The notes beneath the pieces were generated by a model, which was not told the DNA's origin, ran no database searches, and was given only the letters and a program-made list of their open reading frames with translations. Source: Octopus sinensis (Eukaryota). Taken from it: 64,000 bases of DNA. A program made the translations under genes and the position numbers. Positions within the stretch are counted from its first letter, which is position 1. Each line of letters opens with the position of its first letter. Below are positions 6,813-61,345 of the stretch, in pieces. The DNA lies in contig NC_043011.1 in the NCBI RefSeq assembly GCF_006345805.1, positions 10,354,001 to 10,418,000 of the forward strand, given 5' to 3'.

Positions 6813-6831
6813 ATACAACATACATACATAC

Positions 6832-6871
<40 letters not shown>

Positions 6872-7056
6872 TATATGCGCACGCACACCCACAACACACA
6901 TACACACACACGTATGCATGCATACTTACAGAGACTGGAAGGCAAACAGAGGGAGTACCACTCAATGTTGTACACACTTTGCATTACATAAACTGATATT
7001 TACATCGATATATTTTAATTCACATTTTGAGAATATATCTTCATACATACATGGCT

Positions 7057-7111
<55 letters not shown>

Positions 7112-7114
7112 TAC

Positions 7115-7147
<33 letters not shown>

Positions 7148-7707: not shown

Positions 7708-7776
<69 letters not shown>

Positions 7777-7843
7777 TGTGTGTTTATTTAAACATACACG
7801 CGTGCGAAAATTAGGTGTATCTTTCTCCAAGTTGTGCCATGTA

Positions 7844-8431
7844 TGTAATTACTCGTAGCGGTAAAAAGGTGGAGGTAGGTGGCAATAACTATTGGACTTA
7901 CTACCAAACAGATAGACAAAGGTAGAGTGACTGGGTACTGATTTACTGACGCCTGTGTAAGGAGGCTACGCTCTGATAGCTGTGAGTGTGTGAATAGAAA
8001 GGACAGCGGAGAAGAGTCCTGTTTTGTGTGATTGAAAGGGGGAAGAGAGAGAAGAAGGTAGGAAGGAATAATCCTCAGACCCGTCCCTAATATTTGCAAC
8101 AGGAGGGACCCTACTAAAAGCAATCACACTGGTGGTGTTAGGCGACCACCTAGTCTTCTGCTTCAAGTGACCAGCAGATCTATAAAAGACAACCGGAAAC
8201 CAAAAGACTCGTCTCCCCTCTACTTCCGTCTCCCCTCGACTTCCGTCTCCTCGGCGGATATCATCTTTCCTAACGATGCCTTCAGCTCTTAAATTCGTTT
8301 TTTGATCGCTGCACCATAGTTGAACACGAGATTCCTTTTCCCTGTCTCTTTGAACATTAAATTACTTCTTTTTGATAATTTCTACGAACGTTGAAGCGAA
8401 ATAGCTTTGCTTAGATGGGTCCCTATTTACA
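7844..8431 (+). mobile_element. possible solo LTR
   Basis: Begins TGTAATTA and ends TATTTACA (7/8 inverted match). TATAAAA at 8181, short direct repeats GTCTCCCCTC(T/G)ACTTCC, ATTAAA at 8356. No TSD found. Confidence 0.3.
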
Positions 8432-9774: not shown

Positions 9775-9970
9775 GTGTTTGTTCGTTTCCCCACTACTGC
9801 TCGACAAGCGGTGTTGGTGTGATTAGGTCTCCGTTACCAAGGGGTTCGGTAAAAGAGGCCGATAGAAGACGTACTGGGGTGGATGAGTTCGACAAAAATT
9901 CTTCAAGGCGGTGCCCCAGCATGGCCTCAGTCTAATGACCGAAACATCTAAAAGATAAAAGAAAAAAAGA
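9775..9970 (+). mobile_element. SINE 3' half with CR1-type tail
   Basis: Homologous to the reverse complement of 27585-27790; ends GGCGGTGCCCCAGCATGGCCTCAG...GAAAC followed by an A-rich tail. Confidence 0.6.
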
Positions 9971-10849
9971 CAAAGAGTGGTAATGACCAAATCTAAAACA
10001 AAAATGGAAGTTATTTACTAAGTATATTGAAATATATTTGTTTGATGTAATTGCATCGGTTCAGTGTTCGCTTGTCGTCAGTTAGCCATGAATAGCAACA
10101 ATTCAGGGGGGGGGGCGAGCTTGTTATATCTTACTGGGAAAATTATTTATGGGTTGCGTAAATATATTGGTAATAAGACATCGTACGCCTGTGCTGGGGC
10201 ATCCACATGGATGCGCGTATGTGTATTATGTTGATTTTGACAGCAGACACAGTGTGACGATAACAATCTCGGGAATATATTATGGACTCGGATTCACCTG
10301 TTTGAAAACGCTCAGCAGACTAATTTAGAAGTCCTTTTAGCATTTAAATAATATTCAAAATGTCTTTCTTTTTTTTTTTGGTTACAAATCGATTTTTATA
10401 TATTTTAAACACTGTCGTTGCTATATTGTTATGAAGATCTAAATACATGTAAACGTATAAACATACACACACACACACACACATTGCTAAGTAAGTTTTA
10501 GAAAAGTACCGTTCACAAAGACAAAAAGAGAATATTATCGAATGTGCTACGAGTAACTAAAAAATCGGGAATCGTGTTTCGTTGATCGAACCTTCACAGG
10601 GGGTCCAGAGAGTTGGCACAGGAGCAACAGACTTGCAGGACAGCTATTTTGCTACCTCTGTAAACGAAATTTCATTTGGCTCATAAAACTCGCTTTAAAC
10701 ATAATTGTGCTCTTGACGATGTGGTGCGGGCAAGAACCCGAAATGGAGGTGTCATCCGTTGGACCTCGATTCAAATAAAATATATTTTAACTCTGCATTG
10801 TAATACGTATTGAGTAATGGTCATCTGGGTTATATATCGAAGAACTTCG

Positions 10850-10908
<59 letters not shown>

Positions 10909-10927
10909 ATCTATCTATATCTATCTA

Positions 10928-11004
<77 letters not shown>

Positions 11005-11026
11005 ATCTATCTATCTATCTATCTAT
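10850..11026. repeat. (TATC)n microsatellite, 5' flank of the Tx1 element
   Basis: Direct reading; a few TATATC variants. Confidence 0.95.
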
Positions 11027-11226
11027 TGACGGATGTGATGTCGTTTCAGCTCCGAAGGTAATCATTTATTTTGACTATTTATAGGCCAATTTTTGTGTAG
11101 ATTTTTGCAAATAAGGTGTGTAAGGCAACCAACTTTCATTTGAGTGCTTTTCCAAGGGAGGAATTCGCCCCTAGGGGCAGTTTCGACCCCATTTCATTTC
11201 TATTATTTTCTTCTCGACATTAGAAA

Positions 11227-13080
11227 ATGTCTAGAAATTTTATTGTAGAACGCTGGTCGCGTTCTTTTTTGGAACAACATTTTCCTAGTCTGGAAACGAC
11301 AGAGAAAAAAAAGAACGTTCGCACGGAAAATGCCAACGTAAAATTCGGTGAGATGAACGCTGCAACCACGTGCGTTAACAGCCCTGTCACCACCGCCACC
11401 ACCACCACTAACAACAGCAACCACGAGACACAACTGCTACCCTAGACCGCCACCCCACCACCACCACCACCACTACCACGACCAACATAATGATAAAAAT
11501 AAAACTGAAACGAAAACTATTGACAAAAACAACAGCAACAACAAGAACAACAATAAAAATGAACTATCTAATAGTGAAGATGCTAATACAAAAAAGTCAA
11601 CAACAGTAAATTTCGCAGATATTCTTCGCCAGAAAAAGGAGATTGTTACATTCACAAATGAAGAGCTCATAGAAACAAGAGCTCTCTTTACAACCCGTGG
11701 ACAAGATTTAGTCCTACATACACCCCAACATATAAAACAAGAAATTGAAAATAAGACAATTGTATATAAAATTATTAGAAAAAACAAAAAACAAATGAAA
11801 GATTACAAAAACTGATTGGAGAAATGTTTAAAAAACATAATGAAAGAAAAAGAGTATATAAACTGGGGTCCCCAGTTTAACACAGTAGTGGTCCGCTTCC
11901 CTAACCAGGAAGTGGCAAAAGCTCACTCTACTGAGTCTCTGGGAAATGATGAAATCATCATGGTCCCTTATTATAAAAACCAGAGGGTGAGTAGAATTAC
12001 TATCAGAAATGTACCCCCCGATATGCCGAACAAATGGATAACAGGGGCAATCTGTTACCACTTGAAAAAGATCAATATTCTAGAAACAGCCGTGTACCTA
12101 AACGACAATTGGGGTGGAAAAACAGTAGTTGTGACCATCCAGATTGAGGGGGCCTCTATCGAGAGCCTACCCGACAAGATATACTTGGAGAATGGGCAAT
12201 GCCTATATGTTATGGCAGAAGGCAAAAAGCCTAGATGCTACAAATGTGGCAGCCCCGAACATTTGATTGCCAAGTGCGATCTGGTACGAACAATTCAGAA
12301 AACAAATAAAATCCCTTTGTTGCCAACACCAACACCAACACACTCAATTATGGAACAACGCCAAGAAAAACAACAAACCAGCAGACAAACCCCAACAACA
12401 TCACCAAGAAAAACAGTACCAACACAATCACCGTTGACTTCACAACCAATTAAACCTGTTGAATTAACAAAAAATCGACCCACGCCCACACCCAGGACGA
12501 CAATTAAAAAGACAGAAAACACTGACGAGAAGACAAATGCTACCCCTAACACCACAACACAAACACCGCACAAAACATCAACAATTTATACAAGCATACA
12601 TAGTGATCCTGTTCTTTTTCCTGTACCCCATACTGATACGTCGGACGAAGAAAGTTCGACGGAATGGCAAATAGCCACAAGGGGTAAAAGAAAAAGATCC
12701 AAAAAACCCACCAAACAAGGAATTAAAGCAGGGAGATATCTAACTCAGGACAACATCCCCCTAGACAATCAAAAAAGTAATGAACTCGTAAAACCACACA
12801 CACAACTAACTGCAATAGACACAGACAATAAAGAATTAATGGACTACATCAAATCTAACATGGTCGTCTGTGAAGATGACTTTAAGACAAACAATCATCC
12901 GCACACCACACCACCGAAACACATCAGAATTTTACACATAACACAAGCACAACACCACTACTGAAAACATTATTTCCGAATGCGGTAGGCGGGTATCAAC
13001 GATACCTGTCGAAAAAACTATACAAACACCTCATCAAAAACGATACAAAAGAAGAAGAAAAAATGAAACTTTTAAAATGA
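11227..13080 (+). pseudogene. Tx1 ORF1 (gag-like nucleic-acid-binding protein), interrupted
   Basis: Core ORF 11816-12964 has CYKCGSPEHLIAKC (CX2CX4HX4C) and a Thr/Pro-rich linker. Open stretches at 11227-11445 and about 11480-11800, and a frameshifted C-terminus (LKTLFPNAVGG...KLLK*) ending at 13080, probably belong to the same ORF. Confidence 0.75.
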
Positions 13081-13144
13081 GTAAGTGACCTCACTCTTGC
13101 CTCTTGTCTCTTCTAATATAGTGTGTAAAACACAATTTTCGTAA

Positions 13145-16100
13145 ATGTCAAGTATGCTTAAATTAGGTTGTGTGAATGCGCGTGGCTTGGCGTCGGCTTG
13201 GAAGCAAGGTTACCTTCTAAACGACATCAAGTCACTGGACGTGGATATAGTAGCTATCAGCGAAACCAGACTCAGTAAGCCGCGGGCCCTCGAGTCCATG
13301 TTTGGCAATCAATTTGACATTTATTTTTCTCCCTGTCTGCCGAACATGGGTGGTGGAGGTACTGCGGTGCTTTTTCGAAAGAGTCTAAAGGTAAAAGTAA
13401 GAGCAATATTCCTAGACCTGGAGGGTAGGCTGGTTGTCTTGGACGTGGATGGCAGAAATGGGTGTGCATTCCGTCTGATGGCAGTTTATGCACCGTCCTT
13501 AACGGGTCGGGCGGATTTCTTCAGACGTCTAGAGGTTTTTCCTGGGTACGTCTAGACCTTTACTGTTAGTAGGGGATTGGAACGCTACCTTGGACACGCA
13601 TCTAGATTATGTGGGAAGGGATAGGAATAGAAGGGGGTGTAAGAGCCTCAAAGACCTGCTCAGACGTTTCCATTTGTCTGACAGGTTCCGACTCGACCAT
13701 CCGAACGTGCCAACGTGGACTTGGACAAACCGCGTCGGATCGTCGAGATCTTATCTAGATAGAATTCTATGCAGGACAGCGGATAGGGATAGTGTAGGAT
13801 GTCCACATTTAAAATAGTCAGCTACACAGATCACAAATTTGTTACGTGTACGCTCGACTTAGATAAAACACATAGGCAGGGTCCCGGTTACTGGAAACTG
13901 AACACGTCGCTGTTAGCGCGACAGGTTACAGGAACCGGATTAGCGAGTTAATTAAGAGGGCGCTGACGGGAGCGGTCGTTAACAACCGCTGGTGGTACGC
14001 CCTGAAAATGGCAATAAAATCGGAATCAATTAGGTTTAGCAAGGAATTAGCGATAGAACGAAATAGAGTAGAGGGAGACTTAGTTAAGAAACTAGAAGAG
14101 GCACTTACCACTGGCAGCGCAACCAACGTGCTAGCTGCGAGGATGGCCCTCGACCAACACCTCAACGCCAAGCACGAAGGTTGCGTCGTCAGAGCTAAAA
14201 TGCGTGCCTTAAGGAACGAAGGGATTGAAGCTGCGCGAGAGGCCCGGGTAGCGGAGGCGCAGCGTGGCAACAGATCAACCATTCGGTCTCTAATAGATCA
14301 ACAGGGATGCAGTTTACTCGAACCCGAAAGGATGTGTGAGGCCTTTCAACAGCACTTTGCTCGACTGTTTGGTGCGAGTGGTGGGTCGGAACGAGGGATG
14401 GATTTCAGTGCCTACCTGACCGACCTGCCGCGGCTCTCGGCAAGAGAGGCGGAGTGTTGTGAAAGTTCCATCACACAGCCGCTGACGTGTGGGATGCGAT
14501 GGCGGGCTGCGCGAGGGATAAGTCGCCTGGATTGGATGGTTTACCCTACGAGCTGTATTGTCGAATGCCAGACTTGTTTGGCGAACTCTTGGCATCAGTC
14601 TACTGCAACTGGCAACAAAACGGGAGAATCCCCGGTTTCGTGAGCCGAGGTGCAGTGACGTTGCTGAAGAAAGACTCAAACAAGGGGAATTTTATAGATA
14701 ATTTCAGGCCCATCACTCTGCTCAACGCAGATTTGAAAATTTTGGCCAAAGTAATAGCCGAGAGGTTGGCGCTTGTCATTGGTAAACTGGTCGACAGGGC
14801 GCAAACATGCGCCGTGCCGGGCAGAACCATACATGACAACCTCCATCTGATGCGCTATATTGTGGACAGGGTAGTTAAGGATCCTGGCATGGGTGGGGCG
14901 CTGATAAATTTGGATCAGTCTAAAGCCTTCGATAGGGTCGACCATCGGTACTTGGCGGCCGTCCTCAGGGCGGCTGGCTTCGGTCCCGTCTTCCGCGGTT
15001 GGATCGCTGCCTTGTATAGCGGCATCCGATCGGTGATTCGGGTAAACGGTCACCTGTCTAAACCGTTTGACATCACGCGTTCGGTCCGTCAGGGGTGTCC
15101 CCTGTCGGCGCTTCTGTATGTATTGACTCTCGAGCCGCTACTGCGGAAGCTGGCGACACTGAGGGGCATCCCACAGGAACGGGTTGCGGGACGAGCGTGT
15201 CGGCATATGCGGACGATGTCACCGTCATAGTGTCGAGCTACCAGCACATCGAGCTGGTCGGCGAGACACTAAGAAAATATGAAACGGTGACGGGAGCAAA
15301 GATTAACCCGGAAAAGTCAGTGGGTTGCTACTCGGCACCTGGAGAAGCAAGCCCATGCCGTCCGACTGCGGCTCAGTAGTGGGACGCTGGACGGACGGAC
15401 CGGTTAAATTGCTCGGGGTCTGGTTCAGTCCGGACCTCCAAATGGATAAGAACTGGGACGAGATCACGAGTAGAGTGGTCGCTCTCAGCCAAACATGGGC
15501 CGAGAGAAAGCTGTCTCTAAAAGGCCGGGCGGAGGTGGCGAACGCGTACATCGCATCCGTCATCGATTACCGCCTGACCGTCGTACCTTGTCCCGACGCC
15601 ACCATCACCAAACTGGAACGCATACTCTTCCGCTTCCTGTGGAAGGGTGGAGTTCCGATGGTGAGGAAGTCCATTTGCTGTCAACATCCGTTGAATGGAG
15701 GACTGGGCATGCCGTGGTTGATGATGCGCAGGCATGCGCTGAGACTGCGACATCTCTGGAAATTCATCGACGACGGTGAACAGGTGTGGGCGCCGTTTGT
15801 GAGGCGCGACTTCCCGCAGCTCGTCTCACTGACCGAACTGAAACGTGGATCAAAAAGAGACCGAAACTGGGCGATTGGCACCGAGAGTGTCGCCAAGCTC
15901 TACAGCAGCTCTGCCGACCGGGGTCAAACTTGTGCAACTTCCAAACGACTAAAGCGTTCTATAGAGGACTAGTGGAGGGGAGGTCCGACGACACACTCGG
16001 GGCAAACCTGGGCGTCGACGAGGAATTCCTAACCCGCCTGTTCAGGACGACGTTCGGGCCGGGGCCTATGGATAACTTCCAGAAATCCCTGGCTTGGCAG

Positions 16101-16591
16101 TGCTATCGAGACGCACTACCTGTTCGAGAGAAGAGCTACAGACACGGTTCGAAAACCATCACCGGACCGACCTGCCCGAGATGCGGTCAGAGCGACGAAA
16201 CCGTTCTGCACGCACTCGTGCAGTGTCCAGATATTTCAGAGCTGTGGTCCTTCGTCGAACAGCTGTTGTCACGTGTAGGTCAGGCTCGCCTATCGGCCGA
16301 GTCTTTGTGAATATTGTTCCACCACCTTCCTTTAAACGGGAAGGGAAAACGGTTTTCGTTACGCTGATGGCTATGGCGAAAGAATGTGTGTGGTGGACGC
16401 GTTTGAAAGGACTGCAAACAAACACCTTCCTCTCTGGTCAGTCTCTCGTCAACTTTTTCAAGTACCACTTGAAAAGGAGGATGAGAATAGAGAGGAAGGC
16501 TTTGTCGAACGAATGTTTTAATAAAAAGTGGGTAAAAGTGGCAAAAATGGTCAGTATGAAAGACGACACTATTTTAAGCATAAATCTGTAA
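13145..16591 (+). pseudogene. Tx1 ORF2: AP-endonuclease, reverse transcriptase and C-terminal zinc finger, several frameshifts
   Basis: Motifs GCVNARGL, VAISET, VGDWNA, SYLDRI, TDHK (APE); KSPGLDGLP, NFRPITLLNADLKILAK, LDQSKAFDRVDH, VRQGCPLS, AYADDV (RT); CPRC...ETVLHALVQC. Confidence 0.93.
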
Positions 16592-16891
16592 CCAAAAGAG
16601 ACAACGAGAAGTAAGGCGACTTACTCATGTGTTCTTTTTCGAACTGCCTGAGGTGACCTTGGTCTTTTTTGTAGGTTTTTCTTTCCAAGACTACACCTAA
16701 ACTGTGAACCTTATATATATATATATATTGCTTTTTTATATACACACACAACCCACAGATCCCTATTGATCAAACTTTTTTTTTTTTTTTTTCTTCTTGC
16801 CCCACCCATCCCACCACGAAAAGAAAAAATTCTACATTGTATTTCGTCCATTTTTATTCTGTGTTTAGCCCTGTGTGGCTACAATAAAAAG

Positions 16892-17440
<549 letters not shown>

Positions 17441-17445
17441 GAATC

Positions 17446-20400
17446 TTGAAACTGAACGCATCCTTCCCGTCCAGACAGGTTTTCAGAGAGAGAATTAACA
17501 CGTTAGTAAAAAGGGCTTTAACGGGAGCCATTGTCAACAACAAATGGTGGTTCGCCCTCAAGAGAGCAGTAAAAGCGGAAGCAATTAGATATAGCAAGGC
17601 ACTAGCCGTAGATAGAAATAGAGTGGAGGGTGAGTTAAGAAGTTAGAAGAGGCAATAAGAAGCGGCATCACATCCGACGTTTTAGCGGCGAGGTTGACCC
17701 TTGACCAACACTTCAACGCCAAACACAAAGGGTGTGCTGTCAGGGCTAGGATGCGTGCTCTAAGGATGGAAGGTGTTGGAACCGCGAGGGAGGCCCGGGT
17801 GGCGGAGGCGCAGCAGGGCAACAAAGCCACCATCTGGTAGATGGACAAGGGCGCGAATTGCTCGAGCCCAGCAAGATGTGCGAGACATTTCAGCGGCACT
17901 TTGCCCGACTGTACGGGACGAGTGGCGAGCGTGAACGCAGGGTGGACTTCAGTGCCTACCTGCACAGCCTACCACGACTCTCGGCAAGAGAGGCACAGTG
18001 CTGCGAAGGTGCCATCACGGCGGCGGATGTGCGGGACGCGATGGCAGAATGCTCAAGAGACAAATCGACGGGTTTGGATGGTCTGCCCTACGAGTTTTAC
18101 AATTGTATGCCAGACTTGTTTGGAGACGTCTTGGCAGCGGTATACTGCAACTGGCAGCAAAACGGGAGCATACCCGGTTTTGTGAGTCGAGGAGCCGTAA
18201 CGCTGCTGAAGAAAGATCCAAACAAGGGGAACATTATAGATAACTTTAGACCAATCACTCTGCTCAATGCAGACCTGAAAATTTTGACCAAGGTGTTAGC
18301 CAAGAGGTTGGTGCTTGTCATCGAGAAACTGGTCGACAACGCACAAACGTGCGCCGTACCGGGCCGGAGCATCCATGACAACCTCCATCTGATGCGCTAC
18401 ATCATAGACAGAGTAGTTAAGGAACCTGGCATGGGTGGGGCCCTGATCAAATTGGATCAATCGAAAGCCTTCGATAGGGTAGGCCATCGATACTTGGAGG
18501 CTGTCCTGAGAGCGGCTGGTTTCGGTCCCGTCTTCCGCAGCTGGATAGCTGCCTTGTACAGAGGCATCCGTTCGGTAATTCGTGTAAATGGACATCTATC
18601 GAGACCTTTCGACATTGCACGTTCGGTCCGTCAGGGATGCCCCCTCTCAGCGCTTCTATACGTATTGACTCTCGAGCCACTACTGCGGAAGCTGGCGACT
18701 CTGAGGGGCATCCCGCGATAATTAGGATGCGGGACGAGCGTGTCTGCATACGCGGACGACGTCACCGTCATAGTGTCTAGCCACGAGCACATCGAGCTGG
18801 TCGGCGAGACACTGAAAGACTACGAAGCGGTGACAGGAGTAAAAATCAACCGGGAAAAGTCAGTGGGCTTGCGGCTCGGCACCTGGAGAAGCAAGCCATG
18901 CCGTCCACCAGTACCTCCGTCGTGGGACGCTGGACGGACGACCCGGTTGAGTTGCTCGGGGTCTGGTTCGGTCCGGACCTCCAAATGGAGAAGAACTGGA
19001 ACGAGATAACGAGTAGGGTGGTCACTCTCGCCCGGCAATGGGCCGAGAGGAAACTGTCCCTAAAAGGTCGGGCGGAGGTGACGAACACGTACATCGCGTT
19101 CATCATCTACTACCGCCTGACCGTCGTACCTTGCCCCGACCCTACCATCACCAAACTAGAACGCATTCTCTTCCGCTTCTTGTGGAAAGGATGCGTCCCG
19201 ATGGTCAGGCGATCCATTTGCTGTCAACACCCGTTAAAAGGAGGGCTGGGCATGCCGTGGTTGATGATGCGCAGACACGCGCTGAGACTGCGACATCTCT
19301 GGCTCTATGTAGACGACGGTGAACAGGTGTGGTCGCCGTTTGTGAGGCACGCTTTCCCGCAGCTCGTCTCCATGACCGAACTGCAGTCGTGGATCAAAAA
19401 GAGGCCGAGGAAGGGCGAATGGCACCGCGAGTGTCGCGTTGCTCTCAAGCAACTCTGCCGTCTCGTGTCGACCTTGAGTGACTTCAACACAACCAAAGCA
19501 TTCTATAGGGGATTAGTGGAGGGGAGGTACGACGACGATCTTGGGGCAAACCTGGGCGTCGACGAGGAATACCTGACCCGCCTGTTTGAAAAGACTTTCG
19601 GGCCGGGACCTATGGACAACTTCCAGAGATCCCTGGCCTGGCGGTGTTACCGAGAAGCGCTACCCGTTCGGGATAAGCTCTATAGGCATGGCTCGAAAAA
19701 CACGGGGCCGAATGCCCGAGATGCGGTCAGAGCGACGAAACCGCTCTGCACGCAGTCGTGCAGTGTCCAACAATCTCCGACCTGTGGGTTTATGTCGAAC
19801 AACTGCTGTCACGTATGGGACGTGTCGGTTTATCAGCCGAGTCTATCGTTAATATCGTCACGCCTCCTTCCTTCAAACGGGAAGGAAGAGCTATTTTTAT
19901 CATACCTGTGGCTATGGCGAAAGAATGTATCTGGTGGACGCGCCTGAAAGGATTAGAGACAAACACTTTCCTCTCTGGTCAATCTCTCAGCAACTTCTTC
20001 AAGTATCACTTGAAGAGGAAAGTGAGAGTAGAGAGGCAAGTTTTGTCTAGTGAATGTTTAAAAAAAAGATGGGTGAATGTAGCAAGGATGGCACGTATGA
20101 ATGACGAAGCCACCTTAACTATGATCCTATGAACCGTAAAAATTAATACAGAGTTGCTTATTTGTAAAAAAAAAAAGAAATATAACATGTGACTTCATTG
20201 ACCGAGGTTGCCGTGGTCTTTTCCGTAGGCTTTTCTTTCCACGGGTAAACCTCATCTGTCCTCCCTTTTACACTTCATATTGACATTTCTGTGATAACGA
20301 TCCCTATTGATCAATTTTTTTCCTTTCCTTTTTTTTTATTTTATCCCCCCCCTTTTCTTATTTTGTCCTCTTTCTTTCCTTTTACGATCCCTTTTGATCG

Positions 20401-20493
20401 ACAACCAAACCCCCTTTTTTACCCCCAAAAGAAAAGCTCTACCTTGTAATTTGTCCTGTCTGTGTGCAGCCCTGTGTGGCTAATAAAGAAACA
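17446..20493 (+). mobile_element. 5'-truncated Tx1 copy 2 (diverged relative of copy 1)
   Basis: ORFs 17858-18721, 18898-19947 and 19758-20132 align motif by motif with copy 1 ORF2; ends GCCCTGTGTGGCTAATAAAGAAACA followed by (TATC)n. Confidence 0.92.
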
Positions 20494-20518
20494 TATCTAT
20501 CTATCTATCAATCAATCA

Positions 20519-22364: not shown

Positions 22365-22606
22365 AAGGCGGTGAACTGGTAGAATAGTTAACATGCCGGA
22401 CAAAATGCTTAACGGTATTTCGTCCGTTTAACGTTCTGAGATCGAATTCTGCAGAGGTCGATTTTGCCTTTCGGAGTCGATGAAATAAGAACCGTTCAAG
22501 TACTGGGACCGATGTAATCGACTTAACCCCTCCCCACAAATTTCGATGTAATCGACTGGCTCCCTCCTCCAAAATTTCAGGCGTTGTGCCTATATCAGAA
22601 AGGGCT
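22365..22606 (+). mobile_element. tRNA-derived SINE family A with a duplicated tail junction
   Basis: Same head and body as 49181-49399; CGATGTAATCGACT occurs twice (about 22510 and 22544). Confidence 0.8.
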
Positions 22607-27209: not shown

Positions 27210-27375
27210 CAATAGGTTTCTTTCAGTTTCTATCGACCAAAACCGCTCGCAACACTATCGTCGGCCCGAGGCAATAACGGACGACACTTGCTCAAGGTAT
27301 TACGCAGTGGGGCTGAACCAGGAACGATGCGGTTGAGAAGCCAACTTCTAACCACACTAGGACGTTGCATCTATT
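27210..27375 (-). mobile_element. tRNA-derived SINE family B (head and body)
   Basis: Reverse complement reads ...GTGTGGTTAGAAGTTGGCTTC...GGTTCAGCCCC...GAAACTGAAAGAAAC. Confidence 0.7.
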
Positions 27376-33576: not shown

Positions 33577-34100
33577 TTTCATCATACTGGTGGCCATGGT
33601 GAAGAATGTATGCGGTGGACTCGAGCGAAAGGTTTAGAGACAAACACTTTCCTCTCTGGTTAATCGCTCAACTTTTTCAAGTACCACTTGAAAAGGAAGG
33701 TGAAAATAGAGAGGCAAGTTTTGTTCATGAAAGATTCAATAAAAGGTGGGTGAATGTAGCAAAGATGGTACGTGTGAACGACGAAACCACTTTGAGCATG
33801 ATCCTATAAGTCAAAAAAAGAGAAAGAGAGCACTTTGCTCTCATGTGTTTTTTCCCTCTCTGCCTGAGGTTACCGTGGTCTTTTCTGTAGGCTTTTCTTT
33901 CCACGAATAAACCTGATCTGTTTTTTACATTTAGGATATTTTCTGTGATACACGATCCCTTTTGATCGCTTTTTTTTTCTTTAACACGATCCCTTTTGAT
34001 CGGAAATTTATTTTCTCCTTTTTTGTCTATTTTCGAAAAGAAAAGCTCTACATTGTATTTTGTTCCCTCTGTGTTCGGCCCTGTGTGGCTAATAAACAAA
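33577..34100 (+). mobile_element. short 5'-truncated Tx1 copy 3 (ORF2 end plus 3'UTR)
   Basis: Aligns to 19895-20493; ends GCCCTGTGTGGCTAATAAACAAA. Confidence 0.85.
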
Positions 34101-34214
34101 CTTATATAGAGACAGGTATATGAACAACAAGTCGGGCGATCTACTTGCGCAAATCAGTCGATGTGTTGACTGAATTATATATATAAAGCTGCAGCTTTAT
34201 CAAGTTCGCTCAAA

Positions 34215-36910: not shown

Positions 36911-39108
36911 CGAACATCGACTACATCCTATGTCAGCAACGGTGGAAGAGTTCAGTCCAAGCTGTGAAGACGTTCCCTAGGGCAGACTGTGGATCTGACC
37001 ATGAACTTCTGGTTGCCAAGATCAAGATGCGACTCTGCAGCGTCAAGCGACCACACGCTTACCAGAATTTTGATACCAGGAAGATCGGTCCATCATATGC
37101 CGCTGAGATCAGAAACCGCTTCGAACTGCTCGCCATCGAAGAGAATCAAGAAGCAGAAGAAATATGGGAGAGGGTGAAGGAAATTGTCGTTGAAACAGCA
37201 GAGAAACATGAACTGTACAAGAAACCCACACGATCAGCAAAGTGGATTTCGGAGGAGACTATTGCAAAAGTAGAAGAAAGAAGGAGATGGCCAGAAGCAG
37301 GGATGAAGTGCGACGCCTGAATGCAATGTTCCAACAGGCCGCCAGGAAGGACAAAGAGAAATACTGGAATGAGGAATGTGCAAGGGCAGAGGGGACATAC
37401 AGGAAAGGGAACATGAGAGAACCGGTACCAACGTGTAAAGAAGACCCGTACAGCATTCATGGCCAGACAAGCAACCATCCGAGGGAGAAATGGTGAAGAA
37501 CTGCATGACCAAGAAGGGATCAGGAAAAGATGGAAAGAGTACACTGAACAGTTGTATGCAGGGAACAGCCTTAATGGGCAGGCAGAAGAGAAACCACTGG
37601 AACTGGAACTGGATCCAGACATCCTGGAGGATGAGGTGGTATGGGCAATGAAACAGCTGGCCAACCGAAAAGCCCCAGGTACTGATGGCATTCCACTAGA
37701 ATTACTCAAGCCAATACCAACAAAAACACTAACATCGCTTTGCCAACGAATATGGAGAACCGGTAAGTGGCCAAGGTAATGGAAGAGGTCAGTTTTCATC
37801 CCAATACCAAAGAAAAGAGACACCAAGGACTGCGCAAACTACCGTACCATCACCCTGATCCCCATGTAAGCGAAATCATCCTTAAAGTCATCCAGAAGCG
37901 CCAGAACAGAACTATTGAGAGAGAATTGCCAGAGGTGCAAGCTGGTTTCAGGAAGGGAAGAGGCAGCCACGGTCACATCGCCAACCTACGGTGGATTATG
38001 GAAAAGGCAAGAGAATACCAAAAGAAGCTGTACATGTGTTTCATCGATTACTCCAAAGCCTTTGACAGCATTGACCATGACAAGTTATGGAAATGTCTGG
38101 AGGAAATGGGAACACCTTTACACCTTGTCCAGCTTATTAGATCACTCTATCAAAACCAAGAGGCTACAGTACGGACACCATATGGCGACACTGATTGGGT
38201 TGAGATTGGAAAAGGCACTCGGCAAGGTTGCATCCTGTCACCAGCAGCCTTCAACATGTACGTTGAAAAGGTGATGAGGAATGCAGGCCTGGAGGATAGC
38301 AGCATTGGAGTTAGGATTGGAGGAAGAAATATCAATAATCTTCGCTATGCAGATGATACAACCCTGCTGGCGGAGAGTGGTAAGGATCTGGAGGATCTTG
38401 TCCTGCTGGTCAAGAAAGAGAGTGAAAAATTTGAGCTGTACCTCAATGTTAAGAAAACGAAGATCATGTCAACAGCAGCCACAACAAACATCAGCATCAA
38501 GATCGATAATGAAGAGATCGAAGTGGTTGATGATTTCATCTTCCTTGGCTCCAAAATAAATCAAGATGGTGACTGCACTCCAGAAATAAGACGGCGGATA
38601 GTACTAGGCAGAGAGGCAATGGTCAGCATGAGCAAGATCTGGAAGAGTAGAGACATCCGCCTCGCTACCAAATGCAATCGTCTTCCCAATAGCAACATAT
38701 GGATGCGAGACCTGGACACTAAAGAAAGCTGACCAGAAGAGAATTAATGCATTCGAGCTTTGGTGTTGGAGAAGACTTTTATGGATTTCATGGACAGCGA
38801 GGCTCACCAATGGAGAAGGTCTTAAGCAGATCAGACCGAAACTGTTGCGGGAAGCTAGGATCACCAAGCATAGATTGGCATATTTCGGTCATATTATGCG
38901 GAGAAAATCCCCGGAGAAGGACATCATGCTCGGAATGGTCAGTGGCAAGAGAGGAAGAGGCCGACCAAGAACCTGCTGGCTTGACACCATCAAGAGTGAT
39001 ACTGGAATGGACGTAGCCAATCTGAAAGAAGCGGCCCAGGATAGAACTGACTGGAGGACACTGATCCAACGAGTGACCGAGAGTCGACTTCGACTGAACG
39101 GATAGATA
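36911..39108 (+). mobile_element. 5'-truncated RTE-clade LINE (BovB-like group), frameshifted
   Basis: NIDYILCQQRWKSS...RADCGSDHELL (end of APE), KAPGTDGIP, FIDYSKAFDSIDH, GTRQGCILSP, LRYADDTTL, YFGHIMRR...GKRGRGRP; GATAGATA tail directly at the stop codon. Confidence 0.92.
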
Positions 39109-56623: not shown

Positions 56624-58374
56624 AGCGCATGGATGTTTATTATCGAAGTTGATTTATGTGTATATGTGTATATGTATGCATGTTAGTAAAAAGTTAATAA
56701 AATCAGTTTATTCAGAGATGTGTTTGTTTATTATTGTTTGAAAATAAGTCAATCTTTATAGTCATTTATTACAATTAATAGTCATATTTATGTATGTGTG
56801 TGTACATATATGTATAAATGAAAGGCACTGTGGATAATGTTAATATTAGACATCAATATATATATTATATGTAACGGTAAGATAAAATATATAAGTATAT
56901 TTAAATTTGCGTGTGTATAATAATTTGAAAATAAAAGTTAACCATTATAGTCTTGTACTAAATAAATAAATATATTTATATTCGTGTGCGTATATTTATT
57001 TGAGAATAGAAACTAATCTTTGTAGTCATTCATTTTTATTTCTATATTTATGTGTGAGTGAGTGCATGTATTTATATACACGCGTACGTTGAACGCATTT
57101 AAGTTTAGGACATTTAAAGATTAAGTGTTATCGATAGATTTACACTAATTTAATTTAAAGTATCATGTACTATATTAGCCGATTAATTAATAAAGATTAA
57201 TACTCAATATTATTATTAATTGAACTTTTTAGTATTATATTATTTATTATATATGTATTATTTATATTATTAATATTTTTTATTTGGTTTTTAAATCAAG
57301 TTACACTTACTATATTATGTTTATATCTTTAATATTCAATTTTATTTTTACTGATTATATTTTCTAAAAGCATATTTAGAGGAATGATTACAAGATGAAA
57401 TTGCCTTTTTTCTGGAATTAAGGAGTTTGTGTTTAGATGTTAGGATTTGAAATATTTCTTCGAGACACTGTTCACACACATGGAAGGTTCCGAGTTAGGT
57501 GAAGAATAAATAATAACTCTGATGAGTTATGATTAACTACAGCTGTTTCAGGCGTGTTTTTTTTTATGAACAAAAGTGCTACATCATGTAAAATCCGTTT
57601 ACATTAGGTGCATGCAAGTAAGAATTGATAAAAATAGCAGCCAAAGTACCCCTCTACCTGAATCACACGCCCATTGTACGTAACGTCCTAGATTATCCCT
57701 AAAAAGACGGCTTGCTGAAGGTTGGAATGTCTTTGAAGATGGGTTCGCTGTATCGTCGTTGATTTGTATCTAAATAACAACAAAATTATGGCAAATATCT
57801 ATATTAACACCTGCACGATTTTCACTACTAAAACAAAAAAAACTTGGATTTTTTGCATGGAATCAAGTACCCTGAACTCCTAATATGCTGCAGATCCCTT
57901 ATAATCCCGGGATCATTGGAATTTTTTATTTTTTCGTTGAATGAATTCCTGTGACCTCCTCATAAAAAAACAAAACCCTCTTTGGGTCCGAAAAATGGGG
58001 TAGAGTTAGGAGGAGGCCTCGGAAATTTCGCTCCCACCCACATTGATCTTTTCACCCTCACGAGGACCATAATTTTGTTATTATTTAGACTCCAATCAAC
58101 CCTGATACAGCAAACCTATCATCAAAGACATTCCAACCTTCTCCAAACCGTCTTTTTAGGGTTAATCAAGGACATTATGTACAATGGGCGTGTGATTTAG
58201 GTAGGGGGTACTTTGGCTGCTATTTTTAGCGTGTCGAGTGACCAGAGAGAGGCTGTTTCATTGGTTCGATTGCGTGATGACTTTTTTTTACACATATATG
58301 TATGTATATATATTATCGGCATATATGTATATATATCATTGGCACTTATCAAACACGAATTTGGCCATTGTCAA

Positions 58375-58452
<78 letters not shown>

Positions 58453-58600
58453 TTTATACATACGTATATGTACATACTTACATCTATACGTATAAATATA
58501 TGCATATGTGGGCACAGGACGTCACGAAATGTGTACTACAAAAAAATACGAAGTACGAGTACATGAAATATGAACTATTTTCTCGAATAACGAAAGACAC

Positions 58601-58746
58601 ATATATGCGACGGGCTTCTTTCAGTTTCCATCTACCAAATCTTCTCAGGGTTTTGGTCGGCCCGATACTATAGTAGAAGACACTCACCCAAATTGCCATG
58701 CTGTGGGACTGAACCCGTAACAATGTGATTAGGAAGCAAGCTTCTT
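58601..58746 (-). mobile_element. SINE family B body (3' part of the SINE split by the ORF1-only element)
   Basis: Continues seamlessly from the head at 60743-60780 once the insert and one TSD copy are removed. Confidence 0.85.
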
Positions 58747-60742
58747 TATTTCATTAAATTTGCCACAAGGGCAGCACACAGAGAGAAGCTTGAGGGCTAG
58801 ACAGAGACATTAATGGGATGAATGATGATGATATAAGGATGATAAGGATGGGAGAAGACGAAAAGCGCCCGCCGACTTTCGCTTCTCTAAAAAATTGTTC
58901 TTTTTTTCTTTCTTTTTAAAAACACAATGACGCAATAAACCTCTCACACAGTTCAAAATTAAAAATAAAACACAAACACGAGGCAATAATCCTCTCACTT
59001 TTTACATTTTTAGTCTCTTTTTGAGGTAATACACCTCTTCAATTTTTCCGCCCGGCCAGGCTCCTCGCTTCATCGAAGCACCTGGTCCGTTCCGAACTTA
59101 AAGGTTTCAACATAAATCTGAAGGAGTCCTTCGGGAAGGAGTTCGTTATCTTCCATTGATCGTTCTCCCATAAGACCTCCGCAGCCACCTGCGAAGGCCA
59201 CTCAGGGTCCTCTGTGTAGGACAGAAGCCCCTCCCACCGGCACTTCCTTTCAATCTTTTTGATTTCATTTTGCAAGGTTCCTCCCTTGTGGAAGAGGACC
59301 AAAAATTCCTCCTCCAGCCAAAGGAGAATCGGGACACACCGGCAGCGTGTCACAACCTGCCGGCAATGTCCCGTTTTTCTTTTTTCTTTTCTTTTTCCCT
59401 TGGGCTGCGGGAGGGTGGTGTTCCCTTGCTGTGTCCAGTAGGTCCTCCTTTTCTCCCGCAGCTCTCGGATTCTTCGGTGGGCAACCATTGTTGCCCACCT
59501 TTCGCTTTCGTTTTTTCGAGGAGGTTTGCACCTCCTCGACATCCTCCTCCTTCTCTCCCTCCATTGAGGGAGCAGGGAGTGGTTCTTCTGTTAACTGCTC
59601 CAGGATCCTATTTTGGTCCTTGGGGCAGTTTTTCTCGATGTGGCCGGTCTTCAGGCACAGGTGACACTTGGGGGGGGGGCGTCCCTCGAGCATCACCGGA
59701 TACCTAGATCCGGCCATCCTCAAAAAATCTGGGAAAACCAGACTTTCGGCTGATTGGGTCCATAGGGTCAACACAGTATTTGACCCCTCCCAATCAGCCG
59801 CAGGTAAAATTTTTACGTTGAGCAGCTTGGTACTGCTACCACCCAGACCCCGCCGAATAGAGTCCTCTATCCACTCGGGTTCAACTCCAAGCTTTCAATA
59901 ATTTCTTTCCACAGTAGCTTGGAAGAAACATTATTTCCTTCCCCTCGAGGGGCCGGCTTGCAAAATCGCAAGCTTCTTTGGGGGAGTCAAATAGCAACCA
60001 GACCGTTGCAAATTTGACTCTCCGTGAAATAAATTTAATAGCTGGCATGTATTCTGCCAGCTCTTTCAAAATTGTGGCTTTCGGGAAGATGGTTATGGTA
60101 TCGAGCGACTTTGAATAAGTCTTCAACACCACCGTCTTCCTTTCGAGCTCTTTTAGCCATGATTTGGGAGGTGTTAATTCCCACACTAATATTTCCTTTG
60201 CCATTTTTTTTTTTAAATAAAAAGTTCAAATACAGTTCGTCAATACGTTTTCAAATAAAGAAAGATACACAAAAAAAGAAAGAAGACACAACAGAAGGGA
60301 AGAAAAAATAAAATTAACAGTTCAAATAAAGTTCTTTTTTTTTTAATAAATGATAGCTGTGAAAAGAGAGTTCAAATCCAGGCAAAGAAATAAATTTCCG
60401 GCCGAAAGGTACTCCTGGCCAATCCTTTAAATCCACGTGGGCACAAACATTTTCAAATACAATTTCTCACAATTATGTGAGACAACACACACGTCTCCAC
60501 CGCAAGGCAGACAAAAAGCCCCGAATCCAGTAAGGACTCCTTGCCTGTTCAAAAAAGTTAAAACCATCAGACAACCAATCCTACCGGACTCACAAAGCAA
60601 AAAGTCTTACCTTACAGTAGAGCGTCTTTCAGTTCAACTTTCGCCAGCTGCATACCAGCGTGACGACTTTTAACAGGTGCTGTTTTTGTTCTTTTTTCTT
60701 TTTAGGACGGAGCTCAGACCGAGGCTTCCTCTCAGTTCAAAC
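58747..60742 (-). mobile_element. complete ORF1-only (half-LINE/HAL1-like) Tx1-related retroelement, about 2.0 kb
   Basis: 15-bp TSD GGAAGCAAGCTTCTT at 58732-58746 and 60743-60757; about 540 bp of 5'UTR, ORF1, about 290 bp of 3'UTR with a Tx1-type tail, and no ORF2 trace. Confidence 0.85.
59039..60204 (-). pseudogene. ORF1 protein (zinc-knuckle), two frameshifts
   Basis: FATVWLLFDSPKEA...PSY, EWI...DWEGSNTV...FPDFL...VMLEGRPPPKCHLCLKTGHIEKNC aligns with copy 1 ORF1 FNTVVVRFPNQEVA...PYY, KWI...NWGGKTV...LPDKI...VMAEGKKPRCYKCGSPEHLIAKC. Confidence 0.85.
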
Positions 60743-60780
60743 GGAAGCAAGCTTCTTACCACACACCCATGCTTGCGCCT
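60743..60780 (-). mobile_element. SINE family B head (5' part of the split SINE)
   Basis: Reverse complement AGGCGCAAGCATGGGTGTGTGGTAAGAAGCTTGCTTCC. Confidence 0.8.
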
Positions 60781-61345
60781 ATTGTTCATGAAATAAACAA
60801 GCGATGACTAACAATAGCACAACTGCGACGACTGTGTGATTCCAAATCCATGGGATTCCTATCAAATACAGCACAATGGTAGAATCGCACATTTCTTCTT
60901 TATTTCAACATTCCCCGGTTATTTCTTATAGAAATCTCTCACATATATTTTACTCTCCTTAAATATCTTTCTTTGATATCGTTTTGCTTTGATTGAATCG
61001 TAGATTGTTCTTTGCAAAGGTGATGACTGATCTAAGTTGAGAGAGGAGATGTGATGATTATACAGACTCCTTTACAGAACATGAAGGATCAGAAATATCC
61101 ACCATTTTGTTATTCGTCAACTCCTAGAAGAAACTGGAAGAAGACGAGAGCAGGAATGTTGTCAGAACCAGTTTTTCCACAGTTCTGGCCTTTTACTTCG
61201 CATTTCTATCAAGCGTCCCGAAACATCGCAACCAAAATCAGAGCCCTTCTTTAGTTACCAGCTGGAATAAAACCTCATTGAACGATGTATTTTTGCGGTG
61301 AATATAGTTTTCGTTGAACTCTGGACGGGTTGTTCTCTAATGATT

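What the first reader, a model, noticed from the sequence alone, without database searches (positions are those of the whole stretch)
58732..60757. Complete ORF1-only retroelement with a perfect 15-bp TSD
Seen: a 2-kb insert is bounded by identical GGAAGCAAGCTTCTT copies. It encodes only a zinc-knuckle ORF1 homologous to ORF1 of the Tx1 element at 11027, and runs straight into a 3'UTR and AATAAA with no endonuclease or RT remnant. Known: ORF1-only HAL1-type derivatives of L1/Tx1 exist in other animals. Inference: it retrotransposed as a unit using ORF2 supplied in trans, so it is a non-autonomous family that keeps ORF1.
Basis: partly seen in the sequence, partly recalled or inferred. Interest (0 to 1): 0.85.

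Follow-up and report, generated by a model that had tools for sequence, protein, structure and literature searches.

The report
ORF1-only octopus retroelement that targets a SINE
This is a dead copy of an octopus jumping gene that kept its RNA-binding protein gene but has no copying enzyme, so it probably borrows one, and every copy found sits at the same spot in a short repeat (a SINE).

Summary
The observation largely holds. A 2,011-bp insert on the minus strand (58747-60742) is flanked by a perfect 15-bp duplication seen nowhere else in the window. It has an RRM-like plus CCHC-knuckle ORF1 and no endonuclease or RT.

Three loci in Octopus sinensis and O. vulgaris hold four further copies. 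None has ORF2, and all share the same junction from ORF1 into the downstream region. ORF1 dN/dS between two copies is 0.26.

Three corrections:
- This copy is dead: a 20-bp deletion and a +1 frameshift break the ORF.
- The ORF does not run straight into the 3'UTR. It continues through a lysine-rich linker into a ~110-codon C-terminal region (its last 92 codons are open in a second copy) with no known homologues.
- AATAAA is completed only at the element/target junction.

Two additions:
- Every junction found lies at the same nucleotide of a tRNA-like SINE, in the same orientation, so insertion is site-specific.
- The 3' end carries a motif shared with three ORF2-type LINE 3' ends in the window, two of them downstream of RT sequence.

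The ORF2 donor was not found, and copy number could not be measured. This is a HAL1/HeT-A-like variant of moderate interest.

The parts
60784..60795 (-). Upstream copy of the host SINE's own flanking direct repeat (TATTTCATGAAC).
   Evidence: Its partner TATTTCATGTAC lies at 58559-58570, 11 of 12 bases identical. The SINE was therefore already an inserted repeat before it was hit.
60743..60783 (-). Head of the host SINE (tRNA-like), ending in the 15-bp duplicated target.
   Evidence: Aligns with the heads of uninterrupted SINE copies in L002 and L003. The same head, ending at the same base, precedes the element in L001, L003 and L002 copy A.
60743..60757 (-). Target-site duplication, 5' copy (AAGAAGCTTGCTTCC on the minus strand).
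   Evidence: Exact 15-mer, two occurrences in the window, none expected by chance.
60205..60742 (-). 5'UTR, 538 nt.
   Evidence: Homologous to the L001 and L003 5'UTRs from about CTGTAAGGTAAG onward. The first ~50 nt do not convincingly align with them. The body sense strand has 21 runs of four or more T, the first within this UTR, which argues against Pol III transcription.
59887..60204 (-). ORF segment 1: ATG at 60204, N-terminal RRM-like domain.
   Evidence: ORF listing and translation. 68% identical to O. sinensis LOC115225585. AlphaFold pLDDT is 82-96 for residues 11-100. The best structural matches are nearly all RRMs, but weak (best E 2e-3).
59886..59887 (-). Site of a 20-bp deletion relative to the O. 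sinensis copy. It shifts the frame by +1 and brings in a stop at 59881-59883.
   Evidence: DNA alignment with L001. The missing 7 aa (VCGLPPG) have a counterpart in the ORF1 at 11816. Frame bookkeeping.
59402..59886 (-). ORF segment 2: second domain, CCHC zinc knuckle (59625-59666) and acidic/basic linker.
   Evidence: Translation. Pfam zf-CCHC E 0.031, below the curated cut-off. The C-x2-C-x4-H-x4-C motif can be read directly. Aligned with ORF1 of the ORF2-bearing LINE.
59370..59401 (-). A-rich, lysine-coding run that contains a +1 frameshift in this copy.
   Evidence: One extra base relative to L001, where the two parts are in one frame apart from a TAA. O. vulgaris P0002 reads from the K-rich run into the next region in one frame.
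59039..59369 (-). C-terminal coding region (~110 codons; the last 92, from LEEEF, were tested); stop at 59039-59041. No homologue outside this family.
   Evidence: The last 92 codons are open, with the same stop, in the window and in L002 copy B, 77% aa identity. The chance of no stop is 0.006 per copy. L003 shows 40% identity over 48 aa, E 1e-6. dN/dS is 0.49 (0.24-1.26), not significantly below 1. Only P0002 matched in 5.8 billion and 1.84 billion protein libraries.
58747..59038 (-). 3'UTR, ending ...GGCAAATTTAATGAAATA with no poly(A).
   Evidence: Read directly. Homologous to the 3'UTRs of L002 copies A and B through to the last base.
58762..58782 (-). 3'-terminal motif TCTGTGT-N4-CCCT-N1-2-GTGGC, 15 nt from the 3' end.
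   Evidence: Four matches in the window and none expected. The other three lie 14-24 nt from ORF2-type LINE 3' ends at 16858, 20459 and 34068; the first two follow RT sequence and all three follow ORF2-tail coding sequence. A related ...CCCCTTGTGGG... 3' end occurs in the L011 LINE.
58732..58746 (-). Target-site duplication, 3' copy. Its first two bases complete AATAAA.
58571..58746 (-). Tail of the host SINE, including the 3' TSD copy.
   Evidence: 78-85% identical to about a dozen uninterrupted SINE copies in L002, L003, L011 and L012.
58559..58570 (-). Downstream copy of the host SINE's own flanking direct repeat (TATTTCATGTAC).

Best explanation
The insert is a now-inactive copy of a non-autonomous, ORF1-only non-LTR retrotransposon family of octopods.

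The family unit is about 2 kb: a ~0.5-kb 5'UTR, one ORF and a ~0.3-kb 3'UTR. The ORF has an RRM-like domain, a second domain, a CCHC knuckle, a lysine-rich linker and a family-specific C-terminal region.

Proposed mechanism:
1. The RNA is transcribed, probably by Pol II, and coated by its own ORF1 protein.
2. An endonuclease/RT (ORF2 protein) from an autonomous Tx1-like LINE recognises the conserved 3'-terminal motif.
3. That enzyme nicks one specific site in the tRNA-like head of a SINE.
4. The RNA is copied there by target-primed reverse transcription.
5. A second nick 15-16 bp away produces the target-site duplication.

Shown: the TSD, the empty sites, the same-site and same-orientation junctions in separate loci, the absence of ORF2 across the family, purifying selection on ORF1, and the shared 3' motif.

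Inferred: trans-mobilisation, the polymerase used, the role of the 3' motif, and the existence of a partner LINE specific for this SINE site.
For: 1. Insertion signature. There is a perfect 15-bp TSD. The flanks reconstitute one SINE, which has its own 12-nt flanking repeats. There are no LTRs or TIRs.

2. Family-level ORF1-only structure. L003 carries the 5'UTR, ORF1, linker and C-terminal region with no APE or RT; L001 carries the same as far as the start of the C-terminal region, where homology is lost. L002 copies A and B carry the linker, C-terminal region and 3'UTR.

3. Selection. ORF1 dN/dS is 0.26 (0.18-0.37) over 271 codons.

4. Site specificity.
- The 5' junction follows ...GCTTGCTTCC in the window, L001 and L003, and the equivalent ...GCTTGCCTCTC in L002 copy A.
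- The 3' junction precedes AAGAAGCTTGC... in the window and in L002 copies A and B.
- Copy A has its own 16-bp TSD.
- All copies have the same orientation as the SINE.
- About 15 uninterrupted SINE copies serve as empty sites.

5. Independent origin of the two tandem L002 copies. Beyond the first 100 nt, B is 86-92% identical to the window copy in four of six 100-nt blocks, but only 51-81% identical to its neighbour A.

6. Link to ORF2-bearing LINEs.
- ORF1 is homologous to the ORF1 of a LINE with Exo_endo_phos, RVT_1 and zf-RVT domains.
- ORF1 is also related to the ORF1 of L004 and of L011/L013, where ORF1 is followed by ORF2.
- The 3' motif is shared with three ORF2-type LINE 3' ends; none expected by chance.
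Against: - No ORF2-bearing element inserted at this SINE site was found in the ~260 kb of octopus DNA available. The partner is therefore hypothetical.
- The ORF2-bearing LINEs that share the 3' motif sit in (TATC)n, not in the SINE. Their nick sites look different.
- Only five copies were seen and none has a fully intact ORF, so current activity and copy number are unknown.
- The interrupted SINE copies share some sequence variants with each other, which a single ancestral insertion could also explain.
- The two L002 copies begin at the same base and are 95% identical over their first 100 nt. This weakens them as two fully independent events.
Confidence: 0.7

Rival explanations
1. Composite-SINE amplification. 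One ancestral ORF1-bearing element inserted once into a SINE master copy. The whole unit (SINE head, insert, SINE tail) was then copied around the genome by the SINE's own machinery, so the identical junctions would be inherited rather than re-created.
For: Every copy has the same junctions and the same orientation. The interrupted SINEs share variants that are rare among neighbouring uninterrupted copies: AAGAAG, GCTTCC/GCTTCTC, TAATCAC/TATCAC. The window's composite has its own outer 12-nt direct repeats. SINEs built from a target gene plus a Tx1 tail are a published precedent (SINEU, PMC4494074).
Against: - L002 copy A is 5'-truncated, yet it is joined directly to the SINE head at the usual base and has its own 16-bp TSD. 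This fits a fresh TPRT event and not truncation of a composite RNA.
- Copies A and B lie in tandem in one SINE, but B is closer to the window copy than to A.
- The body sense strand has 21 runs of four or more T, starting at position 140, which would stop Pol III.
- Uninterrupted SINE copies with the AAGAAG or TTCC/TTCTC variants exist, for example window 27215-27357 and L002 28116. A preferred target subfamily explains the shared variants equally well.
Confidence: 0.12
2. Deletion derivative of an autonomous element. The family's active members carry ORF2. The 2-kb forms would arise by internal deletion, either after insertion or repeatedly during reverse transcription.
For: Distant ORF1 relatives (27-30% identity) belong to elements with ORF2. 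The C-terminal region has no known homologue and could in principle be an ORF2 tail. Only five copies were sampled.
Against: - The same junction from ORF1 through the linker to the C-terminal region is present in copies 71-84% identical, from separate loci and two species.
- The junction is in frame in L001 apart from one stop codon.
- The C-terminal region shows no similarity to the window's ORF2 tails.
- It matched no RT-containing protein in 1.84 billion or 5.8 billion sequences.
- No close ORF2-bearing relative appeared in either library.
Confidence: 0.1
3. Host gene or retrogene. The ORF would be a domesticated ORF1-like host gene copied by a LINE, rather than a transposon family in its own right.
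For: Annotators called fragments of it as genes: LOC115225585, and parts of CAI9739654.1 and XP_029639579.1. ORF1 dN/dS is below 1.
Against: All five copies are damaged by frameshifts, stops or a lost knuckle cysteine. There is no poly(A). All sit at one SINE position. Two of the three gene models are chimeras with SINE or integrase sequence.
Confidence: 0.03

Closest known systems
HAL1 ('half-L1') of mammals
   Same: A non-autonomous LINE derivative that encodes only ORF1p and depends on ORF2p from an autonomous element. Such families arose several times (PMC5753468, citing Smit 1999 and Bao & Jurka 2010).
   Different: HAL1 derives from mammalian L1. From general knowledge, L1 ORF1p has a coiled coil, an RRM and a CTD, and HAL1 is spread by a poly(A)-dependent, non-site-specific mechanism. 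Here ORF1p is of the RRM/CCHC type. There is no poly(A), insertion is at one SINE position, and the ORF has an extra C-terminal region with no homologues.
HeT-A of Drosophila telomeres
   Same: A non-LTR retrotransposon with gag (ORF1) only and no pol. It is thought to use RT from TART or TAHRE, and it goes to one kind of genomic site (PMC5537684).
   Different: From general knowledge, HeT-A belongs to the Jockey clade. It adds to chromosome ends, probably without nicking, and serves the host. The octopus element inserts internally with a 15-16-bp TSD into a SINE, and no host role is evident.
Target-specific Tx1-clade LINEs (Tx1L into Tx1D; Keno, Kibi, Koshi; Tx1-Mar into Mariner-N4_AMi)
   Same: ORF1p of the RRM/zf-CCHC type (PMC5203782). 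Strong preference for one sequence, often inside another transposon. Tandem arrangement at the target. Partner-dependent short derivatives are known (PMC4494074).
   Different: Those are autonomous elements with APE and RT. This family has neither, so Tx1 membership cannot be tested by RT phylogeny. A SINE head as target was not found in the papers read.
SINEs and other 3'-tail mimics of LINEs
   Same: Non-autonomous, and shares a short 3'-terminal sequence with LINEs of the same genome. That is the usual basis of recognition by the partner's RT (PMC4494074).
   Different: It is 2 kb long, protein-coding, and unlikely to be transcribed by Pol III.

Membership tests
Non-LTR (TPRT) retrotransposon insertion | Target-site duplication flanking the insert, with an identifiable empty site. 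| tested here: met
   A perfect 15-bp TSD. The joined flanks form one SINE that aligns across the junction with uninterrupted copies.
Non-LTR (TPRT) retrotransposon insertion | No LTRs or terminal inverted repeats. | tested here: met
   Self-BLAST of the body and of its termini found nothing significant.
Non-LTR (TPRT) retrotransposon insertion | 5'-truncated copies that keep the 3' end. | tested here: met
   L002 copies A and B start in the K-rich run and extend to the exact 3' end.
ORF1-only non-autonomous LINE derivative (HAL1-like kind) | Encodes a LINE ORF1p homologue. | tested here: met
   BLASTP E 2e-10 against the ORF1 of an ORF2-bearing LINE. Relatives P0003 and P0006 are ORF1s followed by ORF2. 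RRM-like fold, weakly supported. CCHC motif present.
ORF1-only non-autonomous LINE derivative (HAL1-like kind) | No endonuclease or reverse transcriptase anywhere in the unit. | tested here: met
   No tblastn/tblastx match to the window's ORF2s. No Pfam APE or RVT match. No RT-containing protein among the matches of the library searches that covered the downstream region.
ORF1-only non-autonomous LINE derivative (HAL1-like kind) | The same ORF2-less structure in several independent insertions. | tested here: met
   L003 and L002 copies A and B share the junction from ORF1/linker into the C-terminal region, and L001 shares it as far as that copy is preserved. They lie at unrelated loci in two species. 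The sample is small (five copies) and genome-wide copy number was not measured.
ORF1-only non-autonomous LINE derivative (HAL1-like kind) | ORF1 maintained by selection. | tested here: met
   dN/dS 0.26 (0.18-0.37) between the window and L001. The window copy itself is frameshifted.
ORF1-only non-autonomous LINE derivative (HAL1-like kind) | Mobilised by ORF2p of an autonomous partner. | not testable with these tools
   Support is indirect only: the 3' motif shared with ORF2-type LINE 3' ends. No partner was found at the same target.
HAL1 in the strict sense (mammalian L1 derivative) | Derived from the L1 clade proper, with L1-type ORF1p and a poly(A) tail. | tested here: not met
   ORF1p is of the RRM+CCHC type. 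The 3' end has no poly(A). The host is an octopod.
Tx1 clade | Placement by RT phylogeny. | not testable with these tools
   The element has no RT. For the window's ORF2-bearing LINE only the domain architecture was shown: APE, RVT_1 and zf-RVT. Names of RT homologues carried no clade label.
Tx1 clade | ORF1p with RRM/zf-CCHC domains. | tested here: met
   The criterion is taken from PMC5203782.
Tx1 clade | Target-sequence preference. | tested here: met
   Four 5' junctions and three 3' junctions lie at the same SINE position. The criterion is taken from PMC4494074.
tRNA-derived SINE (identity of the target) | tRNA-like head. | tested here: inconclusive
   ARAGORN at an 80% threshold called a tRNA-like structure in one of four copies tried, and otherwise only at a relaxed threshold. 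A B-box-like GGTTCAGTCCC can be read directly.

The most novel reading that the evidence does not exclude
No autonomous LINE specific for this SINE site exists. Homing would then be directed by the non-autonomous element itself.

The polyadenylation signal is completed only by the target bases (AATA|AA). Transcripts should therefore end inside the downstream SINE sequence and carry 15-25 nt of target at their 3' end. That tail could anneal to other SINE copies and steer a borrowed, differently targeted ORF2 protein to them, with the element's own ORF1p and its unique C-terminal region helping to capture the enzyme.

This would be an RNA-guided, protein-assisted way for a parasite of LINEs to choose its own safe harbour inside another parasite.
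Probability: 0.12. Interest if true: 0.75.

Novelty: new variant of a known kind. Interest (0 to 1): 0.45.

Why it matters
ORF1-only LINE derivatives are known from mammals (HAL1) and flies (HeT-A). A long-lived example in a cephalopod, in a Tx1-like lineage, shows that keeping ORF1 while losing ORF2 is a recurrent strategy.

It also offers a natural system for two questions:
- What does ORF1p contribute when ORF2p is borrowed?
- How is target choice inherited by a non-autonomous element?

The strict insertion into one position of an abundant SINE is a three-layer nesting of parasites. It may help explain how octopus genomes tolerate very high repeat loads.

Practically, the family misleads gene annotation. 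Three octopus gene models contain fragments of it.

Tried and rejected
- Exact look-ups of the window's 107-aa and 167-aa ORFs in public assemblies found nothing.
- The first protein search gave one hit only. A profile of the C-terminal region found only P0002.
- tblastn/tblastx of the region downstream of the knuckle against the window's ORF2s gave nothing. The idea that the C-terminal region is an ORF2 tail therefore has no support.
- The RT homologue search gave no clade names, so 'Tx1' stays unverified by name or phylogeny.
- Two degenerate DNA pattern scans of JGI metagenome contigs found nothing.
- Loci of more distant ORF1 relatives (L004-L013) held no further copy of this family and no LINE at the SINE target.
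- A whole-window repeat scan was swamped by microsatellites and was uninformative.
- ARAGORN gave only weak support for a tRNA-like head.
- Programmed frameshifting at the A-rich run was considered. An A_AAA_AAG heptamer is in the ORF1 frame, but a -1 shift does not reach the downstream frame, and L001 has both parts in one frame. A mutation is the simpler reading.
- The AlphaFold model is confident only for residues ~11-100. The C-terminal region is not interpretable.
Full report
**What is at the coordinates.** The 15-mer GGAAGCAAGCTTCTT occurs exactly twice in the 64-kb window, at 58732-58746 and 60743-60757. None is expected by chance, even with one mismatch allowed. The 2,011 bp between the two copies is a unit on the minus strand. 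Its termini share no similarity, so it has no LTRs or inverted repeats.

**Anatomy on the minus strand**.
- 5'UTR: 60742-60205.
- ATG at 60204.
- The ORF now lies in three frames: 60204-59887, then 59886 to about 59402, then 59369-59039. An A-rich, lysine-coding run at 59401-59370 lies between the second and third parts.
- 3'UTR: 59038-58747, ending ...GGCAAATTTAATGAAATA with no poly(A).
- The only AATAAA is formed by the last four element bases plus the first two target bases.

**The host site is a SINE.** Joining the two flanks with one copy of the 15-mer gives a continuous ~200-bp repeat. That repeat aligns across the junction with another copy in the window (27215-27357). It also aligns with about 15 uninterrupted copies in the octopus loci fetched later. 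These serve as empty sites. The interrupted SINE has its own 12-nt flanking repeat (60784-60795 and 58559-58570, 11 of 12 identical). The order of events was therefore SINE first, element second. The SINE head is only weakly tRNA-like by ARAGORN.

**The protein.**
- After correcting the frameshifts, the ORF aligns with the ORF1 of the ORF2-bearing LINE at 11816-12964. Identity is 23% over 192 aa with E 2e-10, and the alignment covers both domains and the knuckle.
- That LINE has Exo_endo_phos, RVT_1 and zf-RVT domains.
- Pfam gives only a sub-threshold zf-CCHC match, but C-x2-C-x4-H-x4-C can be read directly.
- An AlphaFold model is confident only for residues 11-100 (pLDDT 82-96), a beta-alpha-beta-beta-alpha-beta unit. 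Its best PDB matches are nearly all RRMs, though weak, with best E 2e-3.
- RRM plus zf-CCHC is the ORF1p type reported for Tx1-like elements of non-mammalian animals (PMC5203782).
- No APE or RT remnant was found by tblastn/tblastx or Pfam.

**Relatives.** A search of 5.8 billion proteins gave one hit, Octopus sinensis LOC115225585 (P0001, 65% identity). A full HMMER scan of 1.84 billion representatives gave 15 hits. All the named ones are from Octopus. Two are fragments of this family inside chimeric gene models:
- P0002 from O. vulgaris (CAI9739654.1).
- P0008 from O. sinensis (XP_029639579.1).

The window therefore comes from an octopod. The species was not determined.

Three family loci were fetched: L001, L002 and L003.
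- **L001** has a SINE head, 5'UTR and ORF1. Homology is lost about 120 nt past the linker.
- **L003** has a SINE head, a longer 5'UTR, a degenerate ORF1, the linker and a recognisable C-terminal region.
- **L002** has a SINE head, a 16-bp target copy, copy A, the same 16-mer, copy B (interrupted by a nested SINE), a 16-mer with one mismatch, and then the SINE tail. Both A and B run from the lysine-rich run to the exact 3' end.
- None of the three loci has APE or RT sequence inside the element.
- Flanks outside the SINE are unrelated between loci.

The ORF2-less structure is shared by copies that are only 71-84% identical, in at least two species. It is therefore a family trait and not a deletion that happened in this copy.

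**Damage to the window copy.** Relative to L001, the window copy has a 20-bp deletion that removes VCGLPPG. The ORF1 at 11816 has a counterpart for those residues, so the deletion is the derived state. The window copy also has one extra base at the A-rich run. The other copies are damaged too:
- P0001 has lost the first knuckle cysteine and has a TAA in the linker.
- L003 carries stops.
- Copy A has a stop and a frameshift.

No intact copy was seen.

**Selection.** ORF1 dN/dS between the window and L001 is 0.26 over 271 codons, bootstrap 0.18-0.37. The source lineages therefore kept a working ORF1.

**The C-terminal region is probably coding.** The evidence comes from several directions.
- Its last 92 codons, from LEEEF, are open with the same stop in the window and in copy B. 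The chance of no stop is 0.006 per copy.
- Amino-acid identity over those codons is 77%.
- P0002 reads from the linker into the region in one frame.
- L003 keeps 40% identity over 48 aa, E 1e-6, although BLASTN does not align the DNA there.
- Its dN/dS is 0.49 (0.24-1.26), which is not significantly below 1.
- It has no homologue outside the family and no similarity to ORF2 tails.

**Site specificity.**
- The 5' junction follows ...GGTAAGAAGCTTGCTTCC in the window.
- It follows ...GGTAAGTAGCTTGCTTCC in L001 and ...GGTAAGAAGTTTGCTTCC in L003.
- It follows ...GGTAAGAAGCTTGCCTCTC in copy A.
- The 3' junction is ...AAATA|AAGAAGCTTGC... in the window and in copies A and B.
- Orientation relative to the SINE is the same in all five copies.
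- The TSD is 15 bp in the window and 16 bp for copy A.

Copy A is 5'-truncated, yet it abuts the SINE head at the usual base and has its own TSD. That is what a fresh insertion event would leave. Tandem copies in one target are typical of site-specific LINEs, because the TSD re-creates the target. Beyond the first 100 nt, B is 86-92% identical to the window copy in four of six 100-nt blocks, but only 51-81% identical to A. A and B therefore come from different sources. Their first 100 nt are 95% identical and start at the same base, which suggests local gene conversion. I leave this as unexplained. Preference for one sequence, often inside another transposon, is a known trait of the Tx1 clade (PMC4494074).

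**Link to ORF2-bearing LINEs.** The motif TCTGTGT-N4-CCCT-N1-2-GTGGC occurs four times in the window, with none expected.
- Three matches lie 14-24 nt from ORF2-type LINE 3' ends (16858, 20459, 34068). The first two are downstream of RT sequence, and all three follow ORF2-tail coding sequence.
- The fourth lies 15 nt from the 3' end of this element (alignment).
- A related ...CCCCTTGTGGGTAAAT... 3' end is found in a third LINE family, which forms 5.28-kb head-to-tail arrays in L011 and L013.

The ORF1 proteins are only ~23% identical, so conservation of this short 3' block suggests a functional signal. The most plausible role is recognition by the RT.

**Most likely mechanism.** The element is a non-autonomous, ORF1-only retrotransposon. 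Its RNA is bound by its own ORF1p and is copied by a borrowed APE/RT at one site in the SINE head. The TSD, empty sites, family structure, selection, same-site junctions and shared 3' motif are shown. The trans-supply of ORF2p, the polymerase used and the partner's identity are inferred. The LINEs that share the motif sit in (TATC)n in the window and in L003. They are probably not the partner. No LINE at the SINE site was found in the ~260 kb available.

**Rivals.**
- *Composite SINE amplification.* This explains the identical junctions and the variants shared by interrupted SINEs. It fits poorly with copy A's private TSD, with the different origins of A and B, and with 21 T-runs that would stop Pol III.
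- *Repeated deletion from an autonomous relative.* The conserved junction across diverged copies, and the absence of any close ORF2-bearing relative, argue against it.
- *A host gene.* Damage in every copy and the transposon-like context argue against it.

**Comparison with known elements.**
- The element works like HAL1, an ORF1-only L1 derivative (PMC5753468).
- It also works like HeT-A, a gag-only element that goes to one kind of site (PMC5537684).
- It is a member of neither. The ORF1p type, the lack of poly(A) and the host rule out HAL1 proper. Clade and target rule out HeT-A.
- Tx1-clade membership cannot be tested without an RT. Two secondary features, ORF1p type and target preference, are met.
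- The octopus LINE paper read here reports RTE and Dong elements and does not mention Tx1 or ORF1-only elements (PMC9115989). Repbase and Dfam could not be consulted.

**Limits.**
- Five copies from loci chosen because annotators had called fragments as genes.
- No genome-wide search was possible, so copy number, age and activity are unknown.
- The partner LINE was not identified.

**Verdict.** The element is a new variant of a known kind and of moderate interest, mainly for its SINE-site specificity and its retained, extended ORF1.

Noticed in passing
window 11027-16893 and about 17500-20503; L003 32100-32270: A Tx1-like LINE with ORF1, APE, RVT_1 and zf-RVT, its ORF2 broken into several frames. 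A second, 5'-truncated copy follows it. Both are bounded by (TATC)n arrays. A 170-bp 3' fragment of the same family sits inside (TATC)n in O. sinensis. This looks like a microsatellite-specific LINE family.
   Followed up: partly
window 33598-34103: A third 3' end of the same LINE type: an ORF2 C-terminal tail, a 3'UTR and the TCTGTGT...CCCT..GTGGC motif. It is followed by TATATAG rather than a TATC array.
   Followed up: partly
L011 4440-19200 and L013 about 4400-19700: Head-to-tail arrays, with a period of about 5.28 kb, of full-length ORF1+ORF2 LINEs in O. vulgaris and O. sinensis. They are joined 3' end to 5' end with almost no spacer. The target or array mechanism was not worked out.
   Followed up: partly
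L002 21822-21921 versus 22486-22585: The two tandem 5'-truncated copies start at the same base and are 95% identical over their first 100 nt but 51-81% identical afterwards. Possible causes are local gene conversion or a short subfamily with a fixed 5' end.
   Followed up: partly
window 60560-60612 (minus strand); L001 about 7575-7660; L003 about 15835-15900: The 5'UTRs of all three full-length copies keep a splice-donor-like CTGTAAG|GTAAG. About 60-70 nt later comes a pyrimidine tract plus CAG. Whether the 5'UTR carries an intron or a regulatory element is unknown.
   Followed up: no
L005-L010 (Logan contigs from runs SRR11869384-94): Contigs of about 1.7 kb, recovered repeatedly, carry a 294-aa RRM/CCHC ORF1 (P0004). 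It is followed by 560 nt of A/C-rich sequence with no ORF2 start. This may be another ORF1-only transcript or element in an unidentified species.
   Followed up: no
window 36964-38732: Remnant of a different LINE with RT only 25-32% identical to the Tx1-like RT and broken frames. It is probably from another clade.
   Followed up: no
window 57650-57791 and 58067-58208: A 142-nt inverted repeat, 87% complementary with 275 nt between the arms, lies just beside the host SINE. It may be two inverted repeat copies or a MITE.
   Followed up: no
L002 10001-21991 (P0002) and L003 10001-36638 (P0008): Two public gene models are chimeras. One joins a translated SINE head and element fragment to unrelated exons. 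The other joins the ORF1 N-terminus to an integrase-like (rve) segment.
   Followed up: partly
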